Assembly (NCBI RefSeq): GCF_003918875.1
Contig: NW_025765178.1
Coordinates: forward strand, 1 to 64,000
Source of the DNA: Haliotis rubra
Lineage: Eukaryota
Reading direction: 5' to 3'
Length of the DNA stretch: 64,000 bases
Of the stretch, positions 1 to 64,000 are shown one piece after another (positions within the stretch are counted from its first letter, which is position 1; the number at the start of each line of letters is the position of its first letter). The notes under the pieces were generated by a model. It saw only the letters and a list, made by a program, of their open reading frames with translations, made no database searches and was not told the DNA's origin. The position numbers and the translations under genes are program-made.

Positions 1-3000
1 TGCCATGGTGAAGGTCACTGCGTGCAATATGGCGGGTCTCGTGTATCGGCACATACAAACAACATTTTGGTTGGACAGCTCGAAACCCAATACAGGTATG
101 GGATTTTGTTCTGGTCGAGCGGGAACAGATTGGTGGAACGGTAATTTTACTCTTATTAGAAATCCGATGACAATGATGATGATGAATTAATATTTAATTT
201 TAGGTACGTTCGCTATAGAAACCGACCACGCAGTGAACTTGCACGACATCAGACTGGCTGGATGACTTGGAATTAGACCAGTCTGAACCTGGCGTGAATA
301 GCTTCTGACCTACATTCAGGGTAAATCATTACCTTTGGTAAATTAATAGGGATCTCAAGGAATCGGAACAGATTACAATACGGTGAGATGATTATAAGAG
401 ACAAGAAAGATCGCATAACTCATATACAGAAATAAGAGTTGTTTATACGTGACTCATAGCTGAAAAAATTGCGAAGTGCAGCGTTAAACCAACCAAAATG
501 TGCAAGGGAAGAAACACTGATCCAACTTGAACATACACACACATTTATTTATTGCAGGGTAAACTACCGAGAAGGTCTTCCATGCGACCCGGGTGTCAAC
601 GAGGGTGATGAAGGAGTCCTGCAACGTTTCACAGTACACACTCGTGACCCCGCAGTCACTGTGGGATCTGTGTTTGTAGCTATCTGGGTGTGAATGGGTG
701 GTTCTTGACACTGTCCCAAACTTTCGGAACTGGAAGATATCCCATACACAAAGCATAATTGTATCCAATGGTATTTCTAGGTTGGCCTACAGAGGATGCC
801 TACCATCAGCTGAACTGGTCCTTGAGGCAGACTCACTCTGTGGTTGGTGAGAGGTGCCAGGTCTACAAACTGTGAGGGCCATTGTGTGTCTGTGCTGTGC
901 AGGGCGGGTACCCACTGCCAGTAAAGCATGTAACAAAAAACAAAAACAGGTTTGTGGAGTAACGGGAAACCAAACAGAAACAAGGATTAGGACCTATATC
1001 ACATTTCAGTCATTTTATATATATATGTACTATCCTTCCAAAGAAACGCATCATAAAAATAGCAATGTCAGCGTAGCAAATGAATTCAAAACGTGATTCA
1101 TCTTACAAAAGGTTTTGCTCTGTTTATGAGTCCCATGGTGTTTATGTTTTGAAAACATCACAATACAACGCACCATCCGTAAAATACCCGTATTTAACAG
1201 CATGATGTTCAATTCGGCTTGTAGTGTCACAGGATTGCTACAATTCACATGCAATGCACGTGAAACTTCTGGGATCAAATAGTCTCCACAATGGGTATAA
1301 AAGGTTGATCGCTGTCTGTCGATTATTCACCAGGCCCACAGTCTCAACGTGCAGTTCCCTCGACGCCGGCAGAATGTGGCAGCAGATGCCCTCGTAGTGG
1401 GCGACCCGAGCCACCACTGCGTGCAGGATCGCTTACATCAAGTACATCACCCGCTAACAGCCAGCGTTTTAATTCAGTACCGCCGACCAAATACCCGATT
1501 GAGGGAGGCTCAACAGGAACAGGTTGAGAGAGGCTGGTTTCACGTGCCAGAAGACCCTGTGCTCTCACAACAACACATCGTCGACATCGGGTTCAATGGT
1601 GCACCCACGTTCAGCCCTGGAACCCACCAAATTGGCGTAGAATCTGTTCAGTGGGATGAATCACGATTTCATTGGAACGACGCGATGGAAGAATGGTGTA
1701 CAGACGTCGACGTGAATGTTTCACCTACGCTTGCGTTCCCCCAGGTGGACAGATTCGGCGGGGACAGTGTTAAGGGATGCGGGGGCGATCACCCGTCGTA
1801 GGAGAAGTGGATTTGCGATGATCCAGGGCAGCCTGGACAGCTCAACGGCACTCTGGACGAAATCCTACGCCCACCCCTCCAATCATTGATCGCCAGAGGG
1901 AGTTGTTTCAACAGGACAATGCCAGGCCCCACACCGTACGTCACAGTTGAGACTTCTTCCAGAACCACAACATCAATGTGCTCCTTTGGCCCCTCAAGAT
2001 CACCGGACTTAAACCCGATCGAACATCTGCGGGATGCCCTGGACAACCTCAGCCCCAGACACTTCAGCAACTCACACATGCACTACAGGCAGAGTGGGCC
2101 GCGATCAAAACACGAGATTCTGAGACTTATTGCTCGATGTCGGTATTTAATGCCGCGTGGCAGTTCTGGCTGCCCACGGTGGTCACATCGAGGTATTGAC
2201 TTCAGTGCCACCACATCGTCTCCATGTCAAACTCAAACTGACTTCCTTCCTTGAGTTGGTGCCAAAGACGGATAAGTCTGCATCTCAGTCTGGCTAATCA
2301 GGCTATATTTCATTGACTCACAGCTTCCTACAAGATAAGCTCTTCAAAAATAGACATAACAATGCAGTTGGAAATTCCTATATGTTTCTTTGGGAGAGTA
2401 TATATATCACGCTTTTTCTTGCATTTTATGGCTATACGTCCAGTTAATAAACTCACAAACAGGCTAATTAGAGCAGGAAGGATGAGGATTTTATCCATTG
2501 TGTAGCTGTTGAAAACTTACCGTTTTCTAACGAAAACTTCAAACTCTTTTCACATCTAGGTAGAGTAGAAAGAAACATCACAATCAAAGACGTGGTGGAC
2601 GTCAGCGTCTCCAAGCGGTTCTACTGACGTCGACGTCAGTCTGTTCAACACCGTCATGGCTGCCAATTTGACTGACTACCGCGATCACCTGTTTCACGGT
2701 AAGCAGTCTTTCTATACACACTGTGCATACTTTGTAACATTTACATGAGTTGACAGATGAATCCAGGCACGTGTTATTTGTTACTATTGTCTGTAATATT
2801 TGCCCCTTTGGAACAGAGCATGAATACAGTATAGGCGGGAGAAGAGGGTGATGAGCCAACGGGAGTAAGGTTTGACGCCACGCCGACAGGGTTTGGTTTG
2901 ATGGTATTCACAAACATCTGCTTTGTGGTCATTGCCTGCAGGTGAGAATGAATCATACCGTGTACAACTCACACGACACAAATATTCCTTTATTGAAAGC

Positions 3001-6000
3001 TTTAATCAGTTGTTATTAACTCAATCAATCATCTACATAGCACTTCAACAATGTCAATATAATAATGTAAACAGCTGCTATACGTCATGCTTATTTGCAG
3101 GCAAGTCTCTGACATCTGGAGTAAAATATTCCTTCGTGAGAGCGTGGTACAACAAAACCTATTGCATCTTCAAATGAATGGCGTCCCTTATCCGCTAAAC
3201 AGCACCGATCACAGTAACAGTCAAGATGGGCCAAGCTGTAAGTATCTTTTACCTATTATATTGTACATGTTCTACAGAGCTGCCGTTGGTTCCCAGTAAG
3301 AAGGTGAATGTGTTTAGATGGAGGACTTTACCGCTGCTGTGTTACCATTATGGGTGAAAGAGCTTGAAAATAACTCCAACTGACACCAAAGATATAGGAC
3401 TTAGACACAGAACGAAACCTTGTCCAGTGGATGGTTCCTTCAGAGTCAGAGCGGCATCCCCAGACAGGGTCTTTTATCAGCACCCGTGCAAGGAGGCATT
3501 TTGAATACTGACTTGATCACCGTCTAATTGCAGTTCACTAATTCAATAGACAATCGTATAACTGTCGAATTTGGAGGACTCCATTCTTTAAAGGCAATAG
3601 TCCCAGTATTATATACCATGCGCGATGGTATCACAGTATCCATGAATCAGGGGACCTGTCCCTTCACCAGCTATACTCGCGACAGGTCTGAGGTTACGTC
3701 CAAACACCGTCTACTACTGCAGTGTCCTGGCTTACAACAAGGCTGGTCTAATAGCTACTTCCATTCTGATGGAGTACAGGTGGACGTCATGCTCCAGTGG
3801 CAGTAAGAATAATGGACGGACTCGGTCTGTACATTGTCAATTTATTCTTCTCTTGATGGTTCAACATAGGTATGATATACAGTAAACTTTTAAACATATT
3901 TATTATATAATGTTGAAAATGTATGCAGATATCCATGACGTGGACTACCAGGAGTTCAACATCCGAAGTCTTTGCCTCCTGGTACGGCTCTTCTCAGACA
4001 CAGACTCCACCATAGCCAAGTATTTCTGGTGTGTGGGGACAATCAATGACACATCAGATTGCAGTTTGATGGACTGGTTGGCTACAGGACTACACACATC
4101 TTCTAGGAGGTCACCTATCTCCAATCGTTAATGGTCAGTGAGCATAGAAAGCTACATTATGTTAGTGCCACTTATGTTAGTTATAGGATGATGTGTATAT
4201 ATATACCTATCACATGATTTACTATCTCGTTCAGGTACAAGGAACATGGGAGCAAGGTGTATGCGGTGGATGTGCTGTTGGTTAACTCTGATGTTGTTGT
4301 ATCTGATGGAGTCGTTGTTGATGAATTCCACCTGAACGTCAGGGATGTAGCATATCTTGGAGACAATCTGAGAAGAACCCATCTTTCTTGAGGTAGACGA
4401 TATTACAGGAAGTACGTCAAGCTGCAAACCTCAAGTCATACCAACATCATGTGGGAAACTGACACAGCGTCGTGTATCAAGGTTCAGGCGCCGGATTCAA
4501 TCTTTAGCTAAAGATGGACATAAGCGTTTACGGGTCCGTAAGTGGAAGCATCCAACAAACGATCTCAAGTCTTGAGGTTGGAGACAGTACAGCTGACTCT
4601 GTATGCTGGATACCCAGAGACTGTTTCCAACTCCCACAGATCAGTTGATGCAATATTACAATAGGAAGGGAAGTCTTCATCTTTACCCTGGACCCTAACC
4701 TCTGTAGAGGCACCTGCAGTGTCGGAGATCACTCAGTCGTCCCTCTGGAACAAGCACACATACAGGTTCACAGCCAGATACCAGCCCTGTCCGAAGATAT
4801 CGTCATCAAGGATGATTGAGTTTGTAATTGACCATGGGCGTCCAGACCGTGGACTATGTTGTTGGTCAGACAGTGTGGACACCTCGGAGGAGAATCTGGT
4901 GGTCCATTCTGTGTTCTGTCTCAATTGGTCATCTCTGCATGTTTCCTGGTAACTTTGAGGGACCAACAGTCTCCAATTACACAGTACGAATGGGCGATTG
5001 GTAACTAGTTTTGCTGTCATTACGTCCATACACTTTTGTAACTACATATATGCACCGCTGGGATTGGAGTTAATGGCAAAATGTCCGATATTATGGTTCC
5101 AAGAACAAGATATTAACTTGTATATTCCTCACTAGTTTTAAGGATTTTCAGTCGGGGACGTAGAAGAAAGCAAAATCCCCTGACATAGGACCAGATCTGA
5201 AACTATAGCTAAGTAGACTCCCTGCTTTGTTCAATTCACGTGGGTACAATATGCAAAGTACATTTCTATTGTCCCTCCGGTCTTGATATTGCCGATTATT
5301 AAGCAAAAATCAGCGTACAAACACACACACACAATAATAATAATAACATATACACAGTAATTTTCTAACCTTCGAGAACCCATCACCACACCATTGCTTA
5401 AGTGCTGTTACCGCTATAATTATACATTTAAGTCCATGTGTAAGTTATTGCTTATTATATCAGAGGGTCCCAGTTCCATGGCACAACCTCGAGTGGTACA
5501 CATGTCCAGGCCACACGGAACGATCGAGCCAATAGGAACACTGTCTAACGTACAGCTGCTCCATGGGACCACTTACATTACTCGTCATGGCGACGAATGC
5601 CGCTGGCTGACAGTTGTAACGTACGCTGACGCCATCACAGTAGATTAAGGACTGCACCAAAGTTCGACCCCATCAGATGGTCTGATGGTAAAATCTGACA
5701 TTGATAATTAAGTTGGTATAAGTCCACATCTATTGGATGGATTAACATTACATATCTCAATAACTGGAAAGAGTTCTTCGTAACATAGTAATCTAGTTGG
5801 TTTCATTGACACAGATGAGGTTTACGTTTGTTCCAGGACGAGATGAAGACTATCAGACATCAGGGTGTGGTGGAGTGCCCATCGCGTCGTAGATGAAGAA
5901 CAGGTGTAGAAACACTGCGACTGGGCTATTGGTACGTGGTATAACTTCATTGTTACAAGCTTAAAAGATTAGTTTTCTGTGTTCTTATCATAAAGTGGTT

Positions 6001-7695
6001 GGAATGAAAGATTCATGTATGACACAGGAACTTAGTGGCTATTTTCAGAGAGTAAAACATCTACGTCAGACACATATGGTGGCAATCCTAAAATGATCAA
6101 TATTAAGGTAAATAATATGAAATATATTTGGAAATTACCAGACATTTGCAAGCAAAACGATAAAAATGTATGTGGAAATATGTGTACTGAACTCATCTTG
6201 GGTCCAAAGCTGGAATATGTAGTTCACGAAGCATCTTCACTACACAGTAAATTGACACAAGTACTGAGTTTTAATGTATAATTTAGGATGGAAGCAGTTC
6301 CATCGTGTATAGCAAGTTTTCCATTCTCACACTATCTAAAAAATAGTCCTTATGTATTCATATACCATGGAAGGAATAAGGGAACACATGTGCTATTAGG
6401 TGGTGTTCCCTTATTTATTTCCAGGATTCCCACAGTGCAATACATAAATTTAAAGAAACCTTGTAAGAGAATAAAGGGAACACTCCAATAATGTTCATAT
6501 GTTCCCCTGTTCGCTCTAAGGAGTATATACAACATCTTAACCATTTCGCATGTACTAAGGTAAATTAGTATCCGTTCAATGACAAGTGGAGCATCGGGGC
6601 AGCAGGACATGAAGCAGTTTGAGAGGGTCCCCTGGTCAGTCCACAGCTCCATCATGACATCGCTCTATTCCACATCGCCCGTGACAGTCTACACCAGTCC
6701 GATGCTCAACAAGGTGGGGCTGGCGGCGACGCGACGTTTAATGGAAGTTGAAGTGGTCCAGACAAGGAACCAGACATCAGTTCCTGGCTTCCAGTGTCCT
6801 GAGAGAGAAAGTCAGTCGGTGTACAGCGAGGGGATATGTGTGTGACCAGAGTCACGAGAAAGTCCGACTCCAATGGGACAAAACCAGCCGACATTTCAAA
6901 ACAGTGGTAAACTGGAATATCTTCAGAAAATCAGAAAACACTGAATGTAAACCATCAATCATTGGTGCAGCGTTATAATATTGTAGTTACAAATATCATA
7001 ATCTTGAGGGTAGTTGCTACAGTAAACAGAACTACAGCAGTTGCGGGTGTTTCAGGATCGGTATTGAGGGAGATACGCTGACACACCAGAGTGTTGTCCC
7101 CGTCCATCTGAGTACACCTGCATACATTAGTGGAGGTGTAACACTGAAGGATGGATCGACATATCATGCCCTCACTTATCCCATTGATGATGGGGAACAC
7201 ACGGAGACAACTTATGCTGAACTTCAGGGTATAGGCTTCTCCAGCGACAATAGGTGGTGGTTTGGTGCTGTAAAACAGCTAGTCAAAATTCAAACAAATG
7301 TACGTCTATACCCAGATATCTTACATTCATATTGCTCAAACCGTGATAAATAAGTCACACTATCTAGTATGGATTATCACATTCCGTCCGTTTTCGTAAA
7401 ATATCTGCAATATTCACGTGTTTAACATCTTCCCACAGATTCTGGCCGTTTGTCTGTGGTCAAACTGGCGACCGACTGACCGTCGCCTGGCGGAATATGT
7501 TTGCTTCCTCCTGGGACGACCTTGAAGTATGAAGTTCACGTTGGAACAGCTCCGGAGGTTTATATTGTAGACAAGCTGTTAACAGAAAACGACGAAATCA
7601 CCTGGACTTTAAATTCGCAATATCGGGGATTTGATGATTTATGTTACCTAACCGTTATTGACACGTGTGTCCATGTCCTGGTCCACAAACAGTAA
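1..7695 (+). CDS. Paralogue A: 3' exons of a giant FN3-like repeat / CBM-containing extracellular protein; frame-disrupted in this assembly (pseudogene or base-call errors)
   Basis: Exon-by-exon collinear with copy B 38522-46672. Approximate exons: 1-96 (VKVTACNMAGL..DSSKP), 203-382, 557-698, 781-949, 2560-2698, ~2810-2941, 3100-3237, ~3305-3500, ~3628-3826, 3929-4130, 4234-5000 (CBM exon), 5463-5687, 5836-5931, ~6588-6907, ~7018-7230, 7439-7695 (YEVHVGT..AVIDTC). Many GT/AG junctions are at positions equivalent to B. Numerous 1-bp indels. Confidence 0.85.
1028..2400 (+). mobile_element. Tc1/mariner DNA transposon (degenerate) in an intron of paralogue A
   Basis: Transposase motifs across frames: DESRF (~1655), DRFGG, QQDNARPH (~1910), SPDLNPIEH (~2000). 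Imperfect TIRs TACTATCCTTCCAAAGAAAC (1028) and GTTTCTTTGGGAGAGTA (to 2400) with TA flanks. Confidence 0.85.
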
Positions 7696-8610
7696 GCTTG
7701 AACCAAGTGCACTTCATTCGTGTTTCTATACTCATATGGTAAAATTTAAACCAGCATGGTGCAACTGATTTTCATTCTCTTCAATGATGATATATTATAC
7801 ACTATTCAATTTGAATAGTAATTCATGGAATAATACAAACTATACTCCTTTACGAACACACATTACTCATGTTGTGCACGCAATGGCACATCGCAACATG
7901 TCTCTATGAGAAAGGTATTCGCCTTTTCATGGTAATGCAGTAGACTGAGCGGTATACCGTTGACCTTGCAACAGAGGACATGAAGTGTGGATGTGTTATA
8001 TATATTTTTCTCGTAAATTGCATGTATGTCCTTGTATTCTCTTTATAACCTTGGTATTTACATTTTTATCCATCCTATTCACATATTCGTTCAATATAAG
8101 TAGCCACCATAACTGAACGTAACCTAGAAAACAAACACGCATACATCCTTGTACTTGTGCAATGTCAAGGAAAGAAATATGATTGTATCGATTAGTATAC
8201 AATAACAGGATTGCAGGAGGAGAATGCCCGAGTAACTCCCATTCTTCTGAAGTGATTGAACCAAGGATCGTCCTGAATAAAGTTATTAGGATATTCCTCC
8301 TTCCTTGACAGAACCCCACTTTCACACCCTTTTCATCTCTTACTTGTGGAAGCTATCTGGAAAAATAACGCGACGCTTCATTTGTGTTTTGTGAATTTCT
8401 TTGATGCACATGGCATGCGTTCTTTGTAGATTCAAGCATTGAAAGCTTCATCGCAAGCGATCCTTACAATTCATATGCACCGCTGGTTCATGGTCCCAAT
8501 CGTAAATATTAAAAGTCGCCGTTTATAGAAAAAAGGACCTTTAGTGTAATTTGGGTTTAACGCCACGTCTGAACAGTGTATAAAACACGGATATAATGGA
8601 GGAAAGACCA

Positions 8611-9045: not shown

Positions 9046-9078
9046 AGCTGATGCTGTCAAATCAAGAAACACAACCTG

Positions 9079-14000: not shown

Positions 14001-17000
14001 TTACAACGTAACTCAGTGTGTCATGTACAGCGTGACAGTCAGTGCGTCAAGTACAACGTAATCCGAGTGTATGTCATGTACAACGTAACACAGAGTGTGT
14101 GTCGTACAACGTTTTCAGTGTGTCAGCTACAAGGTAACTCAGCGTATCAGCTACAAGGTAGAAGATAGAAGAATTTATTACGGTATATAGGCTATCAATC
14201 TGCACAATAAATGCAAAGTGGTATATGATATATAGACAATATGTATTTCAACATATACATAGGTATATATATATATATATACATGTCTCTTCTAACATTG
14301 GATAGAATTCCTTTAGATAGTGCATGTTTAATAAATAATGAAATTCTTTTATAAGTAAATTCTTATCTTTGTACAAAACAACTTATGATATTTATTAAAC
14401 ATGGACAATTAAATTTGTAGGTATTTGTTTCCCTTAAATTTGCATATGCATCGCAGACAAGTACAAAATGTAATTCATCTTCAAAATTATATGGTTGTTA
14501 ATATTTTACATTTTGCTTTAACCCACTGTCATCTTGACATCTTACGTTACATAGAGAGGTAATTGTTGAATACGTAAATAGCATAAATAACGGCGATATT
14601 CCCTTAGATGTACATTAGAAATATATTCAATATCCAGTATCGACTTTAATGATTTGTAATAGCGATAAATGTGTTTATCTACGACGAAAGCAACATATTT
14701 TGCTTTGCAAAATCTACAAGTCTTTATTTAAACATAAATACAAATCATTTGTTACACTACTCAACTCTTGGCTTTCCCACACAAAACCAAAATCCATACG
14801 CTTAATAATATTCTTATATAAGATGCCCAAGTAATTCTACATACAATCATCAAGCTTTTAAAGAATTTAAGAGTGTTCAAAAATCTATCGGTAGCCATAT
14901 TGCTGATAGTTTACACCTCAGTTTACTAATACAATATCTACCGCATTCTGCTATCATTGCGTTATTGGACATGCTTCTTACCTACACCTAGTACACATTT
15001 AGCAAAATTAGAGTGGAATTTGTTAATAGTTTGTCTATCTTGGTGACCCCATACGTCTGCAATAACAGTAGCGATATTTTCATTTTTATTTTTACTGGGT
15101 CAAAGAGCTTGAAAAAAACACTTTGGTGACATTTGGATATTTATAAGATACCGTTTGATAGCAAATAAGGCTTTTAGTGGTTTTATGGTGGCGTGTACAA
15201 GGTAAGTCAGTGTGGTGTCATGTGCAACGTAACCAGTGTGACATGCCAACGTAACTCAGTGCGTATTTCGCCGCTACAAGCCAGTGTGTACCGCGTACAA
15301 CGTACCCTGTGCGTGTGGCCGCGTACAACATAATCCCCAGCGGCCAATTACAAGGTAATTCAATGTGTCAGCTACAAGCAGTAACTCAGTGTGTGTCATG
15401 TGCAACGTTCCTCAGCGTGCGCTCGCGTACCAAGGTAAGTCAGTGCGGTAAATATGTAAATTACGTAACTCAGTGCGTGTGGGCCGCGTGCAACGTAACC
15501 TACCAGTGTCAGTGTACAAGGTAAGTCAGTGTTTCAGCTGCTGCGTTTCTCATAAAATACGCAACGTACCCAGTGTGTCGCGTACAACGTAAGTCAGTGT
15601 CATGTACCGTAACTCAGTGTGTGTTAGATGCAAGAGAGTTGCGTCATATACAACGTAATCCCCAGTGTAACGTTAACAACGTAAGTCAGTACGCAATTAC
15701 GTAACCCAGTGTGTTAGATGCAAAGCGAGTTAGCGTGTCATACAATGTAACTCATGTGTGTGCGCTGCGTGCAACGTAACTCAGTGTGTCGCGTACCAAA
15801 TCAACCTGCGTGTGTCATGTGCAACGTAACTCATTGTGTGTCATATACACCAACTAAGTGTGTCATGTGCAACGTAATCCCAGTGGTGTCAGCGTACCAA
15901 GGGTAACTCAGCGGTCAGCTACAATGTAAATCCCCAGTGTACAAGGTGCAACGTAACTCAGTGTTCTGGCACAACGTCACCAGCGGGTCATGTACAACGT
16001 GTCAGTGAGTCAGCTGCTGCTGGGTAACCCAGTGTGTGTCAGCTACAACGTAACTCAGTGTGTATCGCGTACAACATAACCCAGTGTGTGTCAGCCACAA
16101 GGTAACTCAATGTACGTCAGCTACAACAAGTCAGTGTGCGTCATGTGCAACGTACCCTCAGTGTAGTCAGCTACAAGGTAAGTCAGTGCGGTGTCATGCG
16201 TAACGTACCCCATCGTAAAATAGCTACAACGTAACTCAGTGTGTCATGTGCACGTGTAACTCAGAGTGGTCATGTCCAAACGTAAGTCAGTGCGAATCAG
16301 GTACCAAGGTAATCCAACGTGTGGCCAGCCAGCAAGTCAGTAAAATAAGGTAAACGTACCCCAGCGTACAAATACAACGCATCTCAGTGTGTCATGTACA
16401 ACATCATAACCCAGTGTGCGTCAGCTACAAGGTAACCTACCGCATGTCAGCTACAAATGTAAGTCAGTGCAAGTCATGGTGCAACGTACCCCAGTGGTCA
16501 GCTGGTAAGCTCGCGTACCGCGTGTAACGTCCTCAATGTGCGTCAGCTACAACCCGTACCTCAGTGTGTAAGTTAGGATGCAAAGAGAGTGAGGTGTCAT
16601 ATACAATGTAAATTAGCAGTGTCATAAAATTCACGCCGTAGCTCAGTGTGTGTCATGCGCAACGTAACTCAGTGTGTGATGCGCAACGTTACTCAGTACC
16701 GCGTACAACGTAAGTCAGTGTCAGCTACAAGGTAACTCATGCGTGTCAGCCACAAGGTAACCCAGTGTGTGTGATGTACAACGTAAGTCAGGTTTGTCAT
16801 GTAAATCACGTAACCCAGTGTGTTAGATTTTAGCAGAGTTAGTGTGTCACATACAACTTAACCCAGTTTGTGTCATGTCCACAGGCAAGCGTGCGTCAGC
16901 TGCAAAGTCAGTGTGTAATTACATGCAACGGTAACTTCAGTGCAGCCAGCGTACAACGTACGTCAGTGCGTCAGCAGTACCACAACTCAGTGTGTCAGCC

Positions 17001-18230
17001 ACAAGGCAAAGTCAGGTCATGTGTAACGTACCCCAATGTGTGTCAGTCACAAACGTAACCCCAGTGTGTTGATGTAAAGAGTTAGTGGTCATATACAACG
17101 TGATCCAGCGGGGCTCGCGAACAACGAAAGTCGCGTACGCCGCGTACCACGTAACCGAATGTGTTAGATGCAAAGAGAGTGCGTACCGGTATACAATGTA
17201 AACTCAGTGTGCATGTCTCTTAATGCGCCCAGTGTGTCACGCCGTAACTCAGTGTGCGTCAGCCAAGGTAACCTTATTGTGTCATGCGTAACGTAACTCA
17301 GTGTGTCAGCGTGTACAACGTAACTGAGTGTGTGTCATGTACAACGTAACTCAGTGTGTTGCGTACCACGTACCCCAGTGTGTGTCATGTACGCACCCAG
17401 TGTATGTCAGCTGGGCTATGTAACTCAGTGTGTGTCATGTGCAACGTAACTCAGTAAAATGCGGTACAACGTAACTGAGCGTGGCCGCGTACAATGTAAC
17501 TCAGTGCGTCATGTACAATGCAACTCAAAGTGCGTCATGTACAACGTAACCTTAGTGTGTGTCATGTACCACGTACCCAGCGTGTCAGTGTATTACGTAA
17601 CTCAGTGTGTTTCAGCTACAAGGTAAAGTCAGTGTGTACAAGTGTGCAACGTACCTCAGTGTGTGTCATACCAAACGTAATCAGTGTAAGGTCACGTACA
17701 ACGTAACCCAGTGTGCGTCATGTGCAACGTAACTCAGTGTGGTCATGTAACAGCGCACCTCAGTGTGTGCCGGGGCTACGGTAACCTTCCAGGTGTCAGC
17801 TGGGGCGGTAAGTCAGTGTGTGTCGCGTGCAACGTACCTCAATGTGTGTCAGCTACAATGTAACTCAGTGTGGGTCATGTACAACATAACTCAGTGTGTT
17901 GATGCAAAGAGAGTGAGTGTGTCATATACAATGTAACTCAGTGTATACAAGTGTACTACGTAGCTCAGTGTGTGTCATGTACAACGTACCTCAGTGTGTG
18001 TCCCAGCAACGTTCCCTCAGTGTGTCCTTACGTGCAACGTACCCCAGTGTGTGCCATGCAACGTAACTCAGTCAGGCCATGCGTAACGTAACTCAGTGTG
18101 TGTCATGTACAAATATAACTCATGCGTACCAAAGCAACAAGGTCAGTCAGTGTGTGTCAGATACAAGGCAAGTCAGTTTGTGTCACAGTCCAACGTAAGT
18201 CAGTGTGTGTCAAATACAACGTTTATGTAT
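14001..18230. repeat. 26-bp satellite (GTACAACGTAACTCAGTGTGTGTCAT), roughly 120 units, in two blocks (14001-14160 and 15196-18230) split by a LINE insertion
   Basis: Tandem recurrence with variants AGCTACAAGGTAAGTCAG and an occasional GTTAGATGCAAAGAGAG unit. Confidence 0.95.
14161..15195 (-). mobile_element. 5'-truncated LINE fragment (ORF2 C-terminal region) inserted in the satellite
   Basis: Minus-strand peptides HSNFAKCVLGV (~15000), GFGFVWESQE (~14780) and EDELHFVLVCDAY (~14460) are typical of LINE ORF2 C-termini. TACAAGGTA flanks both sides. Clade not determined. Confidence 0.75.
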
Positions 18231-26660: not shown

Positions 26661-26893
26661 GTACAGAAATAGCTTATCAACATAGTTAACTGTCATCTGC
26701 TTCAGTCAGTACTTATATGAGTAATTGGGTTAAATATAAGATTCATATAATTCAGCTCAATAACTCTCAGCAATACAGTCACTGATTGACGGAAGTATCA
26801 GTATCATCCGAAGTTTGGGATTTGTGTGTTTTAACACACGATTGATTGAATGTTTCATAAATTGTACTTATGAGGATTTTACATTGGATCCAG

Positions 26894-44800: not shown

Positions 44801-46672
44801 GGTGGCTGCGACGACGGACGGGGTTGAAATTGTCAGAGAAATTAACAAGATATCACTAGAAGAATTGAGTGTCTTGAGTGGGACCCAGACTGAATCCATC
44901 TCCTCTGACAGAGGGATGTGTCATCAGGACCAGAACACAGTCAGGCTCCACTGGAGCCAGGCCGACCGACAGCTGAGGTCCACAGTGGTAAGTGGCTTAC
45001 TGTACCTTAGTCCTCGACATGTGTAAGATCTACGCTAATGGTGGTACAAGTGATGTTGTTGTTTAACACCACACTCGGAAATATTGCAGCTATATGACGG
45101 TGGTCTGCAAATAACCGAGTCTGGACCAGACAATCCAGTGTTCAACATCATGAACATCCGTCTACACAATTAGAATACGGTGACATGTATCATGACATGA
45201 GGCTGACCACCCGATCCGATAGGTCGACTCTTTCGACAATCCTTGGCTACTGAAGGCCAATTCACCCAGCGGTGAAGGGTGATCCGAAAAGTGCGCAATG
45301 TTACGATGATGGATAAACACAACTGGATTAGGTTTGTTGATAAACGTTTTGGTGGTTGTCAGTTGCCTTTGTTATATATCTCGTTATATTTATAGGTTTC
45401 AGTTGAGGGTAAACTGCGTACCTACCAGGGTGATATTCCAAACTACATGCATTACACATATGCTACATTTTCCGATGTAAACTTGGAGATTGGCTCGACA
45501 TACAACGTCTGTGTCGTTCCTGTTGACGTGTTTGGGACGACTGGAGAGAAATCAACTTCGTACTTTACAGTTCGTCATGAACCACCAACTGTATCTGGTT
45601 AGTACTGATAACGTCAAACAATCAGCCTCCAGTCACTGTCCTAACATGACATGTCATGTAGCGGTGGGTTACATATGTCCAACATTCATGATCAGTATAC
45701 ATGAAGGTAAACTTATGAATTCTCATTGTTTATGGAATTGATAATCAATTATATATAATGTTAATTTTGATATTGTTATCAAACGGAAATGTGAGAGCGA
45801 TTGTCTAAATAGGAACAGTTACAAGAGTCGCACAAGATAGGAAGTCCGAAAGTGCCGCGTTAATTATACCCACAACTACATGTATTGGTGAGAACGATAT
45901 CCCCAAATGCAACATATCTTATATTTAGGATTACACTTTCTTAGTAAAGTACAAATTCTAGTACTTTTTGGGGTGAGTCCCATGCGGGATTCGAACCCGT
46001 ACTCTAAGAATCAGACACCTAATCGCCAGCACACAATGACGCCTAGACCGCTCAGCCACCGCGGCTTCCACAAAAATGGAAGTCGGACAACTAGTAGTCT
46101 AGACTGCAGACTTTGTGTAATGGCGATTAGGTGCCTGACTCTGCGGGCGGGGGTTCGAATCCCGGATCGGACTCAACCCAAAGATTCGAACCCACACCCT
46201 CAGGCAACAAATCGCCAGCACACATAGATGTCCCCAAAGTCCGAAATCCCCAGATAAATTAGAATAAAGAGTATATAATATAAAATCTGATGAACTTTGG
46301 CACAATAAATGAGCACTCTCTTTGTGGTTGTGTTTAGCGCTATATGAAGTTTCAGTAATATTGATATATATCCTGTTTCGAATTTCATTTCCAGATTCGG
46401 GACGCATATCCCTTTCACAAAACAAAACCAAGCTGACCGTGTCGTGGAGGAACATGTTTATGTCTCCTTGGAATGACCTCGACTATGAAGTGCACATAGG
46501 AACATTGCTTGGAGGAGCTGATATTGTCGACAGAATGTTGACAAAGAAGGAAGAAATTGTCATTCAGCTGAACTCGAGACAAGCTGAATATATCTATGCT
46601 ATGATAACTGCTATCGATGTCTGTGGAGCTTACATTCAACGTACTCAGAGTTTCACTATCAATTATGACTAG
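26894..46672 (+). CDS. Paralogue B, intact part: 37 exons encoding 2416 aa of a giant uncharacterised FN3-like repeat protein with Cys-rich and CBM-like modules
   Basis: GT-AG, phase-compatible exons: 26894-27053, 27388-27609, 27738-27885, 28124-28398, 28936-29133, 29246-29381, 29776-29810, 29952-30081, 30362-30591, 31065-31235, 31366-31537, 32942-33196, 33991-34211, 34344-34449, 34623-34739, 34935-35067, 35586-35757, 36016-36292, 37208-37397, 37502-37716, 37855-38087, 38522-38675, 38770-38948, 39369-39509, 39647-39809, 40222-40354, 40793-40914, 41086-41225, 41331-41478, 42066-42260, 42419-42622, 42714-43466, 43793-44005, 44351-44446, 44653-44987, 45396-45597, 46395-46672 (TAG). The sum is 7252 nt = 1 + 3x2417. 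Recurrent motifs WxxFxDxESG, YxxxxGTxxGxxD, VxAxNxAGL and SDGVxVDxxPP. Confidence 0.92.
31751..32785. mobile_element. Non-autonomous Kolobok-like DNA transposon in an intron of B
   Basis: TTAA-GGTCACATGCAACCAAAAC at the left end and GTTTTACGTTGCATGCGACCT-TTAA at the right end (TIR plus TTAA target site); no ORF. Confidence 0.7.
35285..35545 (-). mobile_element. 3' end of a retroposon family with (ACTC)n tail; relatives at ~28708-28772 (+) and ~47155-47560 (-)
   Basis: GAGTGAGTTAATATTTAACGTCGCATCGGCAATAT is the reverse complement of the 28730-28772 tail; GGCTATAGA-containing segment is shared with 47355. Confidence 0.6.
36385..36904 (-). mobile_element. Internally deleted Tc1 element retaining the transposase C-terminus
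   Basis: Minus ORF 36616-36858 reads PHLNPLEHIWD..LEAVLHEEWRRLP..IRRL..MRR..VIKSHG. TIRs ..TTAAGCACCCC / GGGGTGCTTAACTAAGTTCTTTGTGTA with TA flanks. Confidence 0.85.
39054..39276 (-). mobile_element. SINE (abalone-type, family 2) with (ACTC)n tail
   Basis: GAGTGAGTGAGTTTAG..GGCGGTCTGTAAATAATCGAGTCTGGACCAGAC..CTGACCACCCGATCCCG..CCCGGACCTTCACGGG. A second copy is at 45055-45270. Confidence 0.85.
42714..43466 (+). CDS. Large exon of B encoding a galactose-binding-like / CBM (CBM_4_9- or DUF642-like) jelly-roll domain between FN3-like modules
   Basis: NLVMNPSFE ... DGHKFVSV ... IQQTISGLEVGREYKLTL ... WNKHTYRFTA ... LDHVSV match the NLxxNPSFE / Q...GxxYxL / W...F.A / LDxVSV pattern of this fold. 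Confidence 0.8.
44482..44632. other. Assembly gap (151 N) inside intron 44447-44652
   Basis: Run of N. Confidence 0.99.
45055..45270 (-). mobile_element. SINE family 2, diverged copy
   Basis: GGTCTGCAAATAACCGAGTCTGGACCAGACAATCCAGTG..GGCTGACCACCCGATCC matches 39090-39215. Confidence 0.8.
45965..46226. repeat. Inverted array of tRNA-like (Pol III A/B box) repeats
   Basis: Minus copy ~45968-46068 (TGGCTGAGCGGTCTAGG..GGTTCGAATCCC), plus copy ~46095-46182 (GGCGATTAGGTG..GGTTCGAATCCC), and a partial minus copy 46183-46226. Confidence 0.7.
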
Positions 46673-50359: not shown

Positions 50360-50393
<34 letters not shown>

Positions 50394-55306: not shown

Positions 55307-55416
55307 TTGGTCAAATTCTAATTTTGAGTGTCAATTTCCTTTTGCAGTGCAATATATATTTCAAAAGAACGGCGAATCACCATCAACGTATCGTATATTA
55401 AATATGTAAGTAAATA

Positions 55417-57772: not shown

Positions 57773-60700
57773 CTAGTCTTGATTGACCTTGAAACTCTGA
57801 GTGCGTTGAATGTTACCTCCACAGACATCGATAGCACTTATCATAACATAAATATATTCAGCTTGTCTCGAGTTCAGCTGAATGACAATTTCTTCCTTCT
57901 TTGTCAACATTCTGTCCACAATATCAGCTCCTCCAAGCAATGTTCCTATGTGAACTTCATAGTCGAGGTCATTCCAAGCAGACATAAACATGTTCCTCCA
58001 CGACACCGTCAGCTCTCCGTTGCTTTGTCTCAACGATATGTGTCCCGAATCTGTAACAGCATATCGATAACGGGCAATATAGAAGCAAAGTTCATCCGAC
58101 CTATAAGAATGTTTTCATTCGGAACAATGTGAGGACTCAGGGAAGTCGTCCCTGATTTTACAATCAAACCAATTAAATTCGATTTTTGATCAAATGTATT
58201 TCAGGACATTAGATATTCCTGTGCAATGTCCTGATATCATTTAATCATTGCCACTTTTTTGTTTTATAAAGATTCTCAGTATCAAGTAATCCATATGCAG
58301 TTCCCTAGGTAATCAAAATAATGCCACCTTCAAAAGAGTACATTGTGCTAAAAGACTATAATGGGCGCATATCCATAAAATAATACTAACATCCCCAAAG
58401 GTAAGTATATCTTACTTGACCTTATTACGTATAGGATAACAAGCTGATCATAAATAAATTGTGCAAAATTTTATGTCCGAACAATAACACAACGTTGATT
58501 GTGTAACATTAGTACTTACCAGATACATCAGGTGATTCATTGGGAACTGTAAAGTAGGAAGTAGTTTTCTCTCCAGTCGTACCAAAGATGTCTACAGGAA
58601 CTACACAGACGTTGTATGACGAGCCAGTCTCCAAGTTCACATCGGACAATGTCGCATATGTATACTGCAAGTGGTTTGGAATATCACTCCGGTAGGGACG
58701 TCTGTCACCTACGATTTCAACCTACAAAACAAAAACAAGTATATACAGACATATGCCACCAAATGTTCTGTTGATACACCTACACGGACTGGAATGTTCT
58801 CAATATGCATCGTAAAATTTCGCTACCAGGTCACGCTGAACAATTTGTGCCAAGATTAGTGTAGATCTTACACATGTCTACAGACTGTGAGTACAGAGAC
58901 CTACCACTGTGGACCTCAGCTGTCGGTCGGCCTGGCTCCAGTGGAGCCTGACTGTGTTCTGGTCCTGATGACACATCCCTCTGTCAGAGTAGATGGATTC
59001 AGTCTGGGTCCCACTCAAGACACTTAATTCTTCTAGTGATATCTTGCTCTTTTCTCTGACAATTTCAACCCCGTCCGTCGTCGCAGCCACCACTAAGCCT
59101 GCCTTGTTGAAACATCGTACTGTTGTGTAAACTGTTATTGACGAGGTGTTGAATGCATCACTAATGTCCATCATAGTTGTCGACTGTCCTGAGGCAACTG
59201 CGCGGAACGTCATGATGTCGTCGCTTCGTCTGCGTCTTCCTGTTTGAGGAACAAAAGAACATCAAGATGAAACGTGTATATCACAGGTTGCTACCGTACA
59301 TCACTCATAATATCGGCAAGTGCATTTACGTACCAATAGCCCAGTCACAGTGATCGACACCAGACTCTCCATCCGTCACTTTCCAGTTGACGCTAACCAC
59401 ACTTGATGTTTGATGATCTTCATCTGAGCCTAAACACAAAGAAATGACATATATCAACACTTTAGAAAGCGACAATCTAAACTTAAAAACCTTCCGAAAT
59501 AATGCAAGTAATAGTGTGTATCTATACAAATATATCGCTCGTCGTTATTCAGGTATGCTTAACAATAGCACCTCACCATCCACAACTCTCCAAGGTGCGG
59601 CAATCGCAAGCCTGTTCCGCTTCCATTCTTTGCTTTTGTGCTCATTACGCTACAGTGAACTATTATATTTTCATTTTTTTCTAATTAGCTTATCAGTTCT
59701 ATACTGTGTGTCTGAATCTTATTGAAAATGTTACTTGTTGAAAATGATTAATAACTTTGATCACCACGTCACTCGCTAGCAGGATTACCTACTGCTCTTT
59801 AGATATATCTCTTGTATGTATAGTCATGTATGCCTCCTTACTAAGAGTACATGTGGCTGACACCTTTAAGTAGCTTGTTTCATCCCTTCACTTCAGTCTG
59901 TTTACTGGACACAGTCGATTTAATTAGCTGTTTGTGTGTCTTGCTAATGGTATTAATTAGCTGTCTTTTTACAGTTGCTCAGTTCAGATATTCGTTCACT
60001 GCCTATCAGCTCTCAATGCTCTTCGCTAGTATTGGGTTCAGTCACTTTAGATTGTCTCTCGTTAACTATTTCCAGCAAGTATCAACAAAGAAACTGAATA
60101 TGTACTGTAATATGTTGCCTGTTGTTTATGTTACTATTTCATTTACAACCTGGTCTCATATGTTGATGACATGTTTCGCCCTATGGCTAGTTTTGTGTCG
60201 CTACTTCCCATAAGTATTCTAAGGCACATGAACGAGCATTGCAACCTATGACCTTTCTGTGACCGTCATCAATTGTCTTGGAGTATTGACCTTGCAAATA
60301 CTTCCTGGGCCAAAATGTGATGGTAAGGAAGTGACACAGTTGGGACATCACCGAATGTGTAGTAAAGCGACATTGTTTTCACGTGTTTTGGAGCATTTAC
60401 CTGGCCCATCACTGATATGACTGAATAATGGCGGAGTCAGATCTACAACGATGGGTTGTGCACGGGAAACAGTGGTCAGTCCAGCAGCATTCATGGCCAT
60501 GACAGTGATGTAAAGACTGGAGTTGTGGGTCAGCTTCAGACCTGAAATATCCCCCTGAACTTTCCTGCCTACATCTGTGTACTCCTGGATTTGACTGCCA
60601 CCTGGGACTCTGCCTGTAATAAGGTGAAGTTTGTTGCCACTTTGTATCTATCAGAAGGTGAGGTATGAATCGTCCAGTAGCCATTTCTTTGAATTTAAAT

Positions 60701-63700
60701 ACAATTAATGAATGTATTCTTCATGAATGCATCACAGCGAATTCTGTCACACTACAAACATATTTAGCTTCTTCAACATGACATTGTACACGAATTAGAC
60801 ACATTTGTATTTAGCATTATACTAACCTAGGTCTCTCGTTGACTCATTTTGATGTAAGCGGAGAGACTTACCAATCGCCCATTTGTACTGTGTAATTGGA
60901 GACTGTAGGTCCTCAAAGTGCCAGGAGGCATGTAGAGATGACCAGTGAGACAGGAACATAGAGTGGACCACCAGATGCTCCTCAGTGTCCACACTGTCCG
61001 GACCAGCAACATAGTCCACGGTCTGGACACTTACATGGTCCAGTACAAACTCCATCATCCTTGACGATGACGTTATCTTCAGCACTATACTGGTATCTAC
61101 AGCTGTGAACCTGTATGTGTGTTTGTTCCAGAGGACGACTGAGTGATCTCCAACACTGCAGGTGCCTCTACAGAGGTTAGGGTCAAGGGTAAAGCTGAAG
61201 ACTTCACTTCCTATTGTAACTATTGCATCAACTGATCTGTGGGTGTCCGAAACAGTCTCCGGATATCCAGCATGCAGAGTCAGCTTGTACTGCCTCCCAA
61301 CCTCAAGACCTGAGATCGTTTGTTGGATGCTTCCACTTACGGACACAAACTTATGTCCATCTTTAGCTAAAGGTGAATCCGGCGCCTGAACCTTGATACA
61401 CGACGCTGTGTCAGTTTCCCATGATGTTGGTATGACGAGGTTGCATTGCGTGGTACTACCAGTTAAATTGTCTACCTCAAAAGATGGGTTCATCACCAGA
61501 TTGTTTCCAAGATATGCTACATCCTTAGGTTCAGGGGGTGATGTGTCGATGACAACTCCATCAGATACAGCTACGTCAGAGGCATGGCCAACCGCGTCTA
61601 CAGCATACACTTTGTTCCATATGGTACCTGTAAACATAGTCGGTACATTGGATGTTAGGAAATATATCACTATATCCGGGCTCAAGATTCTAGATGCAAC
61701 ATATCATATACTTACCAGCAGACAACGGAGTTGGAAGCGATATACTGAAGGATGTGTGCAGTCCAGTATCCAACCAGTCCATCACACTGCAATCTGATGT
61801 GTCGTTGATTGTCCCCACACACCAGAAATACTTGACGATCGCGGAGTCTGTGTCAGAGAAGCCGTACCAGGAGGCAGATACTTCAGATGGAGAACTCTGG
61901 TAGTCCTGGTCGTGGATGTCTGCAGAGTTTAAACATACAGTCTTGCAGTGTTCCCACAAGCTAGAAATATGTGGATATATAATGCGTCATTAATGCTGAA
62001 AATACCCACTGTTTTCATTTCTGTATTGAGCATTGTCTTAACAAACAGTTATATTTTCAGTATCGTACCTGCTCCATCCTTCGTTCTGCCTGCCACTGGG
62101 GGTATGACGTCCACCTGTACTCCATCAGAGTAGGCCCAGCTGACCAGACCAGCCTTGTTATAAGCCAGGACACTGCAGTAGTAGACTGTGTTTGGACGTA
62201 AACTCAGACCTGCCCCCGTATAGCTGGTGGAGGTCAGGTCCCCTGATTCGTGGATACTGTGACCTGAGAACATCAAATCGCAGATCCATAGTAGTAAATA
62301 TATTAGGAAAGTGGATACTGATAAAACAGGCACATTACATCCAGTCAGTAAAATAGATTTGGAGATATTGAATGGTGTTTAATAAACTAGTAAGCAATTA
62401 TCCATTTTATCATGTTACTTGTAAAAAATCGATTTAGGTCGAGACATGCCATGGACTTAAACAACCAATTGTGACCGAGCTTATTTATGTTGTACAACCA
62501 AATAGCAAATTGATGTGGACATGATCCGATCCTGGTTCCACGGGGTTAAGGATCGCCTTAGTCAAAGTCAATAGATAATTATGTCAAAGGAAACTATGTT
62601 AAAGTTATCCTAGATATGTGTAAAACTATGAAATCCTGTTTATCTACTAATGGTAACATATGGTCATTCTTTAACTGCAGAAACAGTACTAGGAAGAGAA
62701 CCTACTTGCTTTGTATTTATGTGACCCTGAGCAGTATCTCTTTACTAAATTAGTAAATATAAATTTGAAATGTATCAGTGATCAAATGGAGTATGATTTA
62801 CATAAATGTTTCATTTGAAACACTCTCATTCGATTAGATTACTTCAATGCGCTATGGGGATGGCTTGATGACATCCATGGATCATGCGAGCTCAAATCTC
62901 CCGTACATAATGCGATGAACAAAGATCAGTAAAACTAATACCTCCTGTGTGTGTGCTGATGTAGACCCTGTATCGGTGGATGCTGCTTATACCAGGCAGG
63001 AAATGTCCAGACCACGTGACGACAAGTGTGTTGTTCTGTGTCTGGAAGTCTGTGTCTTTGGAGTCACTGATGTTTAGGACTTCCTTCACCTGTTTTTTTT
63101 ATATTTGTGTCTGTCAGTCATGTATAGATGATACAAATCAAAACAGCAACGACAGGAGTAAATTCTAACATCCGGCGACCCTGATTCATTCGGGTATAAG
63201 GGGAAAGTAGTGCTGACAATTGTATGTATTTAATTAGAAATCCGTGACTATGAAAGTGTTCAAGTTTCTTATGGGAAACAGTGTGTACCACAGAATGCAC
63301 TTACAGTTCTTCCTGACTTTCTTGTTACCGTGGGTGGTGATGTAACGAAAGTGACACCATTTGACTTGAAGATGCTGTAATTTCTGTTATTATACCAAGC
63401 TTTCACGAAGAAGGAGTATTGTATTCCAGGTCTCAGAAAGCTACCTGAAACAAAGAAATAGCATGTATTAAGACAGCCCCATCCCAATCATCACTGAACC
63501 CTTCTCCGGAATGTAATACGAAACATTTTGACTTCTCAAAATAGGTCACGGCTGGCCCTTTCATATATATATATATATATTGTTGAATGTAGCCTCTTTG
63601 TAAATGTTACATGCGTCTTGGCATAAAATATGAAAACTATGTCTTTATGAAAAGCGATGAGGTACTTCAAATACCTCAGAAAGAAAGAAAGTTAAATGGA

Positions 63701-64000
63701 ATTTCTTTTAATGACATCACTGCCTATGTGAAAACATACACGACAGTCTAGGCTACATCACGTATAAAGACATTGACTGAAACGTCTCTGATATATATCT
63801 CTAGGCAACCATTCACAGCGGCAGCAAGATTTAAGGCACGAAATGCATTGATATTATTTTACAACTGGATCATATTAGGAAGAATATAAATGAACAGTTT
63901 CAAATAGATGAAAAAACCCTTTTGATAACAGAGGAGAAACATAATTTACATTGACCTTTGTCCAAGGACAAAATCGCTGATGTTTGTTGACCTGCATCAA
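57773..64000 (-). CDS. Paralogue C: 3' exons of the same giant FN3-like repeat / CBM protein, convergent with B and apparently intact; continues beyond the window
   Basis: Exons in transcript order: (>64000)-63956, 63444-63305, 63089-62942, 62263-62069, 61919-61716, 61627-60872, 60613-60401, 59429-59334, 59239-58905, 58721-58520, 58050-57773 (stop). Lengths and phases match B exons 41086-46672, except +3 nt in the CBM exon. Confidence 0.92.

What the first reader, a model, noticed from the sequence alone, without database searches (positions are those of the whole stretch)
1..64000. Cluster of at least three paralogues of a giant, uncharacterised FN3-like repeat protein with a lectin-like domain
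Seen: three collinear copies (A+, B+, C-) with shared exon structure. B has ~20 modules of ~100-130 aa, most ending in a variant of SDG(V/I)x(V/I)DxxPP, plus a CBM-like insert and Cys-rich modules, and ends ..FTINYD* with no hydrophobic anchor. Knowledge: the W..YxxxxG..VxAxNxAG pattern is FN3-like. I recall similar proteins in marine invertebrates only as uncharacterised and cannot assign a gene name. Inference: a locally expanded family of very long secreted rods displaying a glycan-binding domain, a candidate mucosal/innate-recognition or matrix/adhesion system.
Basis: partly seen in the sequence, partly recalled or inferred. Interest (0 to 1): 0.8.

Follow-up and report, generated by a model that had tools for sequence, protein, structure and literature searches.

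The report
Abalone giant FN3-rod gene cluster
This stretch of blacklip abalone DNA holds three neighbouring copies (one long, one cut by the window end, one frame-broken) of a gene for a giant rod of about 22 fibronectin-III domains carrying one sugar-binding-type domain. The family is conserved from molluscs to amphioxus, is already in the databases as "uncharacterized protein", and I found no study of it.

Summary
The window is Haliotis rubra. Copy B is RefSeq LOC124266452: 2552 of 2554 residues identical over 40 coding blocks at 25698-46669. Copy C is LOC124266445: 869 of 869 residues identical, covering aa 430-1298 on the minus strand. Copy A (1-7703) is a collinear 3' copy that needs about 70 frameshifts and 2 stops to be read.

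The N gap (44482-44632) lies inside a phase-1 GT-AG intron (44447-44652), and no residue of the annotated protein is missing across it.

The modules are true but divergent FN3 domains. The insert is a CBM4/CBM61/DUF642-type beta-jelly roll (Z 15.8).

Full-length relatives are about 3,400 aa: a hydrophobic leader, a roughly 410-aa head, 22-23 FN3 domains, and the CBM between FN3-19 and FN3-20. The 22 modules are positionally orthologous across six phyla. The family is therefore ancient and fixed in architecture, and it is expanded in Haliotis (at least 9 loci in H. rubra).

None of the three copies is a complete gene here. The B and C models lack a leader. B's upstream exons (19.05-26.4 kb) are frame-broken. 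All frame breaks lie in the first 26.4 kb, so decay and unpolished assembly cannot be told apart.

Function is untested and I found no paper. This scan already reported the same family on other DNA of this genome (s1-327964).

The parts
1..7703 (+). Copy A: the 3' part of a paralogue, cut by the window start. It is collinear with aa 836-1964 of H. rubra LOC124288735 (P0159) in 16 blocks and is frame-broken throughout. Its CBM exon lies at about 4238-4999.
   Evidence: about 80% aa identity, but about 70 frameshift events and 2 stops; many frameshifting indels in the CBM exon versus B; collinear with L003 through the introns; 4.2 indels per 100 nt.
14002..18222 (.). Minisatellite with units of about 24-26 and 50-53 bp, between copy A and the first traceable B exon.
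19054..24920 (+). Upstream relic exons of copy B, at about 19054-19322, 19862-20001, 20322-20545, 21261-21316, 23060-23413, 24409-24717 and 24798-24920. They correspond to aa ~250-740 of full-length Haliotis paralogues, are frame-broken, and are not part of the RefSeq CDS.
   Evidence: three guide proteins agree on frameshifts at 19085, 19277, 20343, 20363, 20439, 20483, 20500, 21274, 23270, 23371, 24502, 24530, 24565 and 24663. Searches read two of them directly.
25698..46672 (+). Copy B open CDS, equal to H. rubra LOC124266452 (XP, 2554 aa): 40 coding blocks, 21 FN3-like modules plus one CBM-like domain, stop TAG at 46670-46672.
   Evidence: 2552/2554 identical with no frame events. GT-AG introns; module count; stop codon.
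42714..43466 (+). B exon encoding the end of FN3-19, a CBM4/DUF642-like beta-jelly roll (about residues 40-205 of the exon), and the start of FN3-20.
   Evidence: exon boundaries. AF2 pLDDT 83. CBM61, CBM4-2, CBM16 and CBM22, Z up to 15.8, rmsd 2.0-2.2 A over 130-136 residues. DUF642.
44447..44652 (+). Phase-1 intron of B that contains the assembly gap 44482-44632.
57773..64000 (-). Copy C, equal to aa 430-1298 of H. rubra LOC124266445 (1298 aa): 11 in-window coding blocks from 63998 to 57776, stop at 57775-57773, CBM exon at 61628-60873. Upstream exons lie beyond the window end.
   Evidence: 869/869 identical with no frame events; every exon is single-frame, 68-97% aa identity to B.

Best explanation
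The window is a Haliotis rubra locus with three neighbouring paralogues of an ancient, uncharacterised bilaterian gene family. A and B are in tandem. B and C are tail-to-tail.

The full-length product is about 3,400 aa. It has an N-terminal hydrophobic leader and a roughly 410-aa head without recognisable domains. In other phyla the head carries SRCR, PAN or EGF-like domains. After the head comes a fixed array of 22-23 divergent fibronectin-III domains. A single CBM4/DUF642-type beta-jelly-roll sits between FN3-19 and FN3-20. There is no membrane anchor.

Inferred mechanism, not shown: the FN3 array forms a long extracellular rod that presents one polysaccharide-binding-type domain near its C-terminal end and a variable head at the other end. 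That is a glycan-binding matrix or surface-coat scaffold or cross-linker.

Within this window, B (LOC124266452) and C (LOC124266445) are open but N-terminally incomplete models. A, and B's 5' third, are frame-broken.
For: Identity: B is 2552/2554 identical to P0193. C is 869/869 identical to P0011.

FN3: the AF2 model of one module has pLDDT 90. All top-50 Foldseek PDB hits are FN3 domains. The module profile hits titin, fibronectin, Dscam and contactins at E 1e-26 to 1e-10.

CBM: AF2 pLDDT 83. VIA Z is 15.8 to CBM61 and CBM4-2. DUF642 matches 22 of 40 relatives, best E 6.7e-9.

Architecture: every full-length relative has 21-23 modules. Each module's best hit is the collinear module in 10 proteins from 6 phyla, with 18-21 of 21 steps increasing.

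Leader and anchor: leaders are seen in Acanthaster, Lineus, Pomacea and full-length Haliotis proteins, and no TM segment.

Constraint: dN/dS is 0.35 for B-C and 0.19 on the CBM exon.

Distribution: molluscs, annelid, nemertean, hemichordates, echinoderms and cephalochordates, all annotated 'uncharacterized'.
Against: No binding, localisation or expression data exist. The window's own CBM exon scores only 14.8 bits on DUF642 against a cut-off of 27. The same fold serves non-lectin roles in Stig cyclases and Cry/Vip toxin domains. The annotated B and C lack a leader, so these copies may not be secreted or functional. No signal-peptide predictor was available. The apparent absence from vertebrates and ecdysozoans rests on the listed hits only.
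Confidence: 0.6

Rival explanations
1. The three copies in this window are non-functional relics of segmental duplications. A is a dead pseudogene. B and C are 5'-truncated copies without leader or promoter. Only other loci of the family (full-length 3,300-3,400-aa genes elsewhere in the genome) are functional.
For: A needs about 70 frameshifts. B's upstream exons carry at least 14 frameshifts and the first ~250 codons are missing. The RefSeq models of B and C start mid-array without a leader. The RefSeq B model skips 26128-26385, which drops half a module. A further near-copy (L001) is annotated only as a 343-aa fragment and has in-frame stops in one exon.
Against: 2,554 codons in B and 869 in C are open without a single break. 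dN/dS is 0.35-0.41, and lowest on the CBM exon. C's 5' end lies outside the window.
Confidence: 0.3
2. The frame breaks are assembly errors. The first ~26.4 kb of the window would be poorly polished long-read consensus, and A and B would really be intact genes.
For: Every frame break in the window lies left of about 26.4 kb and affects two different genes. There is none in the about 3,400 codons to the right. A versus its closest paralogue has 4.2 indels per 100 nt, 83% of them 1-2 nt, in introns as well as exons. B versus its closest paralogue has 0.73 per 100 nt. Pseudogenisation does not predict extra intronic indels.
Against: Break density differs threefold between A and B's 5' part. Only 36% of A's indels are homopolymer-type. 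Homopolymer-length spectra of the two halves differ only slightly. A also has excess substitutions (10.2 versus 5.6 per 100 nt).
Confidence: 0.35
3. The family is a diversifying innate-immune or mucosal pattern-recognition system. This is the first reader's alternative: local expansion and mosaic exchange would generate recognition variants.
For: There are many loci per genome, at least 9 in H. rubra and several each in Lineus, Ptychodera, Acanthaster and Mytilus. dS between B and C varies per exon from 0.06 to 0.58, which is compatible with gene conversion. Some relatives have SRCR or C-type-lectin heads.
Against: The putative binding domain is the most conserved exon (omega 0.19, 94% aa identity between B and C). 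Modules are one-to-one orthologous across phyla. No exon between B and C has omega above 1.
Confidence: 0.15
4. The jelly-roll domain does not bind sugars. It would serve as a protein-protein interaction or structural module, as the same fold does in Cry/Vip toxins, or as a small-molecule pocket as in HpiC1-type cyclases.
For: Foldseek and VIA list Cry1 and Vip3 domains and Stig cyclases at Z 13-15, close to the CBMs. Pfam HpiC1-like matches 9 of 40 relatives.
Against: The top-ranked matches with the lowest rmsd are ligand-bound CBMs (CBM61, CBM4-2, a porphyran-binding CBM). DUF642 is the commonest Pfam match.
Confidence: 0.2

Closest known systems
RefSeq H. rubra LOC124266452 (XP, 2554 aa) and LOC124266445 (XP_046557193.1, 1298 aa), 'uncharacterized protein'
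   Same: They are copies B and C themselves: 2552/2554 and 869/869 residues identical.
   Different: The RefSeq models start mid-array. They omit the frame-broken upstream exons (19.05-24.9 kb) and half of one module (26128-26385). Copy A did not turn up among the protein models that my searches returned.
Full-length family members, e.g. H. rufescens LOC124141844 (3406 aa), Acanthaster planci LOC110977889 (3304 aa), Branchiostoma floridae LOC118405866 (3412 aa), Lineus longissimus LOC135497317 (3573 aa)
   Same: The same 22-23 FN3 modules in the same order, with the CBM between modules 19 and 20 and no TM segment.
   Different: They have an N-terminal leader and a 400-650-aa head, with SRCR in Amphiura and a weak PAN match in Lineus. 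The copies in this window lack these.
Fibronectin type III domain superfamily (Pfam PF00041; titin, fibronectin, contactins)
   Same: A seven-strand beta-sandwich, a conserved Trp in the N-terminal half, a Y-x-V-x-A-x-N-x-AG strand F motif, and profile-level sequence similarity.
   Different: The modules are too divergent for Pfam to call on single exons. They have their own signature (W-x-x-F-x-D-x-x-S-x-I-x-x-Y ... SDGV-x-VD-x-x-PP), which is shared with bacterial multi-domain proteins.
CBM4/CBM9-type carbohydrate-binding modules and plant DUF642 (PF04862) cell-wall proteins
   Same: The beta-jelly-roll fold (Z 15.8, rmsd about 2.1 A over 130-136 residues). An N-terminal NPSFE-type strand and a C-terminal LD-x-V-x-V strand are conserved.
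   Different: 14-21% identity. The window's exon is below the Pfam cut-off. The domain is embedded in an animal FN3 rod instead of an enzyme or a two-domain plant wall protein. The ligand is unknown.
FN3-rich extracellular matrix proteins with one lectin-like domain (usherin, pikachurin/EGFLAM, tenascins). This comparison comes from my own knowledge.
   Same: The general design: a long FN3 array plus a glycan- or receptor-binding globular domain, secreted.
   Different: No sequence relationship beyond FN3. Their globular domains are different (laminin G, fibrinogen-like). No vertebrate member of the present family was seen among the listed hits.

Membership tests
FN3 superfamily | A seven-strand beta-sandwich of about 90-110 aa with FN3 topology | tested here: met
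   AF2 on a 118-module alignment gives pLDDT 90.4 and 7 strands. The Foldseek top 50 are FN3 domains except one PKD-like domain, prob 1.00, TM 0.5-0.68. The folded sequence was the paralogue module P0159:545-655, because a window module spans two exons.
FN3 superfamily | Sequence-profile similarity to recognised FN3 domains | tested here: met
   The module profile A3 hits titin (2.6e-26), fibronectin (7e-14), Dscam and contactins. Pfam fn3 reaches E 1e-8 to 1e-16 on whole relatives.
FN3 superfamily | Pfam PF00041 call on the window's own exons | tested here: not met
   Ten B exons give no fn3 hit at E<=1. The exons split the modules and the modules are divergent.
CBM4_9 / DUF642 galactose-binding-like jelly roll | Beta-jelly-roll fold superposable on solved CBMs | tested here: met
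   Z 15.8, rmsd 2.0-2.2 A, 130-136 aligned residues to CBM61, CBM4-2 and the EndoMA1 CBM. Foldseek E is about 1e-7 to 1e-6.
CBM4_9 / DUF642 galactose-binding-like jelly roll | Pfam family score above the curated cut-off | tested here: not met
   The window exon scores DUF642 14.8 bits against a cut-off of 27. 22 of 40 relatives match at E<0.1, best 6.7e-9.
CBM4_9 / DUF642 galactose-binding-like jelly roll | Carbohydrate binding | not testable with these tools
   Needs glycan arrays or pull-downs with the expressed domain.
Bilaterian 22-FN3 + CBM giant protein family (unnamed) | Collinear, positionally orthologous module array with the CBM between modules 19 and 20 | tested here: met
   B is collinear with H. 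asinina P0013 aa 74-2937. The module-by-module best hits form a diagonal. B has 21 modules in its open part.
Bilaterian 22-FN3 + CBM giant protein family (unnamed) | N-terminal leader and head (secreted full-length product) | tested here: not met
   B's model starts MVDSNN... and C's starts MGCKWRGF..., both mid-array. The first ~250 codons of full-length paralogues are not found upstream of B. C's 5' end is outside the window.
   A-B is 76% and B-C is 89% identical over the CBM region. B and C are inverted and 11 kb apart. A and B each have a different closest locus on other contigs of the same assembly.

The most novel reading that the evidence does not exclude
The family is an ancient bilaterian extracellular component with a fixed 22-FN3 rod and a DUF642/CBM4-type glycan-binding domain. 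It is retained in lophotrochozoans, ambulacrarians and cephalochordates and lost in vertebrates and ecdysozoans. It would anchor or cross-link a polysaccharide of the mucociliary surface coat or apical matrix. That would make it a previously unrecognised core matrix protein of marine invertebrates, and the first animal use of the plant-wall DUF642 fold.
Probability: 0.25. Interest if true: 0.6.

Novelty: new variant of a known kind. Interest (0 to 1): 0.38.

Why it matters
The genes are already catalogued, so the window adds no new sequence.

What the analysis adds is a description of the family. It is a one-to-one conserved array of 22 FN3 domains with a CBM/DUF642-type domain at a fixed position. 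It is shared by six animal phyla, has many copies in abalone, and I found no literature on it.

If the jelly roll binds a glycan, this would be a conserved and still unstudied component of invertebrate extracellular matrix or mucus.

For genome annotation, the locus shows that the RefSeq models of B and C are N-terminally incomplete. It also shows that the left 26 kb of this contig is either decaying or poorly polished.

Tried and rejected
- Pfam on ten B exons found nothing. Pfam on ten other ORFs, including TE-like ones and the Cys-rich exon, also found nothing.
- Pfam on the heads of full-length relatives gave only weak EGF_2 and PAN hits, plus SRCR in Amphiura.
- A PDB sequence search with the CBM profile gave no hit.
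- Paper searches by DUF642+mollusc, by nine accession or locus names, by DUF642/metazoa and by Haliotis mucus proteome found nothing relevant.
- I first took the H. rubra contigs L001 and L003 for orthologues from another species. The 99.9-100% identity of P0193 and P0011 to the window showed they are paralogous loci of the same genome. My 'B versus L001' dN/dS is therefore a paralogue comparison.
- I first called A a plain pseudogene. The indel spectrum and the confinement of all breaks to the left 26.4 kb make assembly error a serious rival.
- A homopolymer-spectrum test for unpolished sequence was inconclusive.
- The exons of B and C were never joined into a spliced model for any tool. Searches were made exon by exon by reference, or with database proteins. 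The joined-model step was left out.
- The gap was not filled and its letters were not looked up. Only distances and frames of the flanks were used.


Full report
**Source and identity.**
The window is eukaryotic, with many short open stretches joined by GT-AG introns.

A word search with the largest exon (42671-43525) gave 91% identity to a Haliotis rubra protein. Later, two RefSeq proteins of H. rubra turned out to be encoded here exactly.
- LOC124266452 (P0193, 2554 aa) aligns to 25698-46669 in 40 blocks, with 2552 of 2554 residues identical and no frame event.
- LOC124266445 (P0011, 1298 aa) aligns with its residues 430-1298 to 63998-57776 on the minus strand, 869 of 869 identical.

The window is therefore blacklip abalone.

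**The three copies.**
Self-blastn shows A(+) 209-5004 matching B 38775-43469, and C(-) 63467-57768 matching B 41063-46677.

A home-made protein-to-genome alignment allows introns and frameshifts. As controls it gave zero frame events for B's 3' part and for C. It extends A to 7703. A is collinear with aa 836-1964 of LOC124288735 (P0159) in 16 blocks at about 80% identity, but needs about 70 frameshifts and two stops.

All ten C exons tested are single-frame and 68-97% identical to B.

A and B are in tandem. B and C are tail-to-tail, 11 kb apart.

The copies are not alleles.
- Over the CBM region, A-B is 76% and B-C is 89% identical.
- Each copy has a different closest locus on other contigs of the same assembly. 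L003 is closest to A and L001 is closest to B, and both are collinear through the introns.

**The gap.**
Left of the gap, the exon ends ...DWAIG with the donor G|GTACGT at 44447. Right of it, a pyrimidine tract ends CAAACAG| at 44652. Both junctions are phase 1.

The RefSeq protein passes from 44350-44445 (aa 2252-2283) directly to 44652-44987 (aa 2284-2395). The gap (44482-44632) is therefore intronic.

In copy C the alignable flanks are 39 nt apart. I used distances and frames only. The gap was not filled.

**Anatomy of the protein.**
Pfam sees nothing on single exons, because most introns cut the modules in the middle and the modules are divergent.

A profile of the CBM exon found 1,367 proteins. 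Among them are 2,900-3,600-aa proteins of Haliotis, Lottia, bivalves, Owenia, Lineus, Saccoglossus, Ptychodera, Acanthaster, Amphiura and Branchiostoma. All are 'uncharacterized' or auto-named 'Fibronectin type-III domain-containing'.

*Modules.*
- A module HMM built from these finds 21-23 modules in every full-length member.
- Each module of the H. asinina protein has its best match at the collinear module of ten proteins from six phyla. The array is thus an ancient, fixed structure and not a recently amplified repeat.
- One module (the paralogue segment P0159:545-655, since a window module spans two exons) folds with pLDDT 90 into a seven-strand sandwich.
- Its top 50 PDB neighbours are FN3 domains, bar one PKD-like domain.
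- The module profile hits titin, fibronectin, Dscam and contactins by sequence.

*The insert.*
- The insert (exon 42714-43466) folds with pLDDT 83.
- It superposes on CBM61, CBM4-2, CBM16, CBM22 and a porphyran-binding CBM at Z 13.8-15.8, rmsd about 2.0-2.3 A.
- 22 of 40 relatives match Pfam DUF642. The window's own exon is below the cut-off.

*Ends of the protein.*
- Full-length relatives start with a hydrophobic leader and a roughly 410-aa head, and have no TM segment.
- B ends FTINYD followed by TAG.

**State of the copies.**
The open part of B lacks the head and the first three modules.

With full-length Haliotis paralogues as guides, B's upstream exons can be traced back to 19054. They carry at least 14 frameshifts on which three guides agree. 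Two of these I read directly.

The first ~250 codons are not found. Immediately upstream lies a 4.2-kb minisatellite.

Two further breaks (about 26101 and 26397) explain why the RefSeq model skips 26128-26385 and loses half a module.

Strikingly, every frame break in the window lies left of about 26.4 kb. To the right, about 3,400 codons in B and C are clean.

| Comparison | Indels per 100 nt | Share 1-2 nt | Mismatches per 100 nt |
|---|---|---|---|
| A versus its closest paralogue (L003) | 4.2 | 83% | 10.2 |
| B versus its closest paralogue (L001) | 0.73 | 53% | 5.6 |

A's indels occur in introns as well as exons. Pseudogene decay does not predict extra intronic indels, so uncorrected long-read error is a serious rival.

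Three things keep real decay possible: the unequal break density, the modest homopolymer share, and an inconclusive homopolymer spectrum. I leave this open.

**Selection.**
Nei-Gojobori dN/dS is 0.35 for B-C over 812 codons, 0.19 on the CBM exon, and 0.41 for B-L001.

dS per exon between B and C ranges from 0.06 to 0.58.

**Mechanism.**
*Shown:*
- an FN3 array;
- a CBM-type fold at a fixed position;
- a leader and no anchor in full-length relatives;
- purifying selection;
- deep conservation.

*Inferred:* an extracellular rod that binds a polysaccharide through the jelly roll and another partner through the variable head, that is, a matrix or surface-coat scaffold. This rests on what is established for CBM4/CBM61-type modules and DUF642 proteins, not on any test here.

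A diversifying immune role is less likely, given the conservation of the putative binding exon and the one-to-one module orthology.

**Novelty.**
- The sequences are in RefSeq.
- I found no paper on the family.
- This scan already reported the same family on another piece of this genome as 'a widespread but entirely unstudied family' (s1-327964). My independent results agree with that note.
- The family is a new variant of a known kind: an FN3 matrix protein with a lectin-like domain.
- The present locus is mostly an annotation refinement.

**Procedural statements.**
Exons were searched by reference, or database proteins were used.

Noticed in passing
window 1-26400 versus 26400-64000: All frameshifts and stops seen in family exons (about 70 in A, at least 16 in B's 5' part) lie left of about 26.4 kb. 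There is none in about 3,400 codons to the right. This suggests a sequence-quality boundary in the contig, or a shared decay zone spanning two genes.
   Followed up: partly
window 14002-18222: A 4.2-kb GC-richer minisatellite (units of about 24-26 and 50-53 bp, 64-84% matches) sits just upstream of the first traceable B exon. This is where the first ~250 codons of full-length paralogues cannot be found.
   Followed up: partly
window 26080-26400: The RefSeq model of B uses a short exon 26080-26127 and then jumps to 26386. Paralogues align through 26080-26287 with a frame change at about 26101. The model thus drops the N-terminal half of one FN3 module, apparently to avoid a frameshift.
   Followed up: partly
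L001 (H. rubra QXJH01001897.1) 1854-12002 versus window 33133-44481: A fourth near-copy of B sits on another contig of the same assembly, about 90% identical through exons and introns. It is annotated only as 343-aa and 154-aa fragments and has in-frame stops in the exon matching 38778-38942.
   Followed up: partly
window 8612-9042: A tandem array of a 37-bp unit, about 12 copies, downstream of copy A.
   Followed up: no
window 36654-36909, 55412-55640, 9692-9964; also 1300-2250: A dispersed repeat is shared between an intron of B, the B-C spacer and the A-B spacer. The ORF at 36619-36858(-), and ORFs inside A's intron (1301-2251), look by eye like Tc1/mariner transposase remnants, but Pfam gave no hit.
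   Followed up: partly
P0018, P0012, P0039 (bacterial MAG proteins): Bacterial proteins of 2,700-4,300 aa (Schekmanbacteria, Acidimicrobiia, Marinimicrobia) carry 22-40 matches to the same module junction (SDGV-x-VD-x-TPP). Capsaspora and Nematostella proteins match at module level only. The module type is older than the animal family.
   Followed up: no
P0189, P0190 (H. cracherodii, H. asinina paralogues, about 3,650 aa): Some Haliotis paralogues of the family carry a precomputed PLAT/LH2 (PF01477) hit, and one a TSP1_ADAMTS hit. These are absent from B and C.
   Followed up: no
window 27890-28104 and 41540-41750: (TG/CA)-rich microsatellites inside B introns read as Cys/Val/His/Thr runs in ORF lists. 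They are not coding.
   Followed up: no
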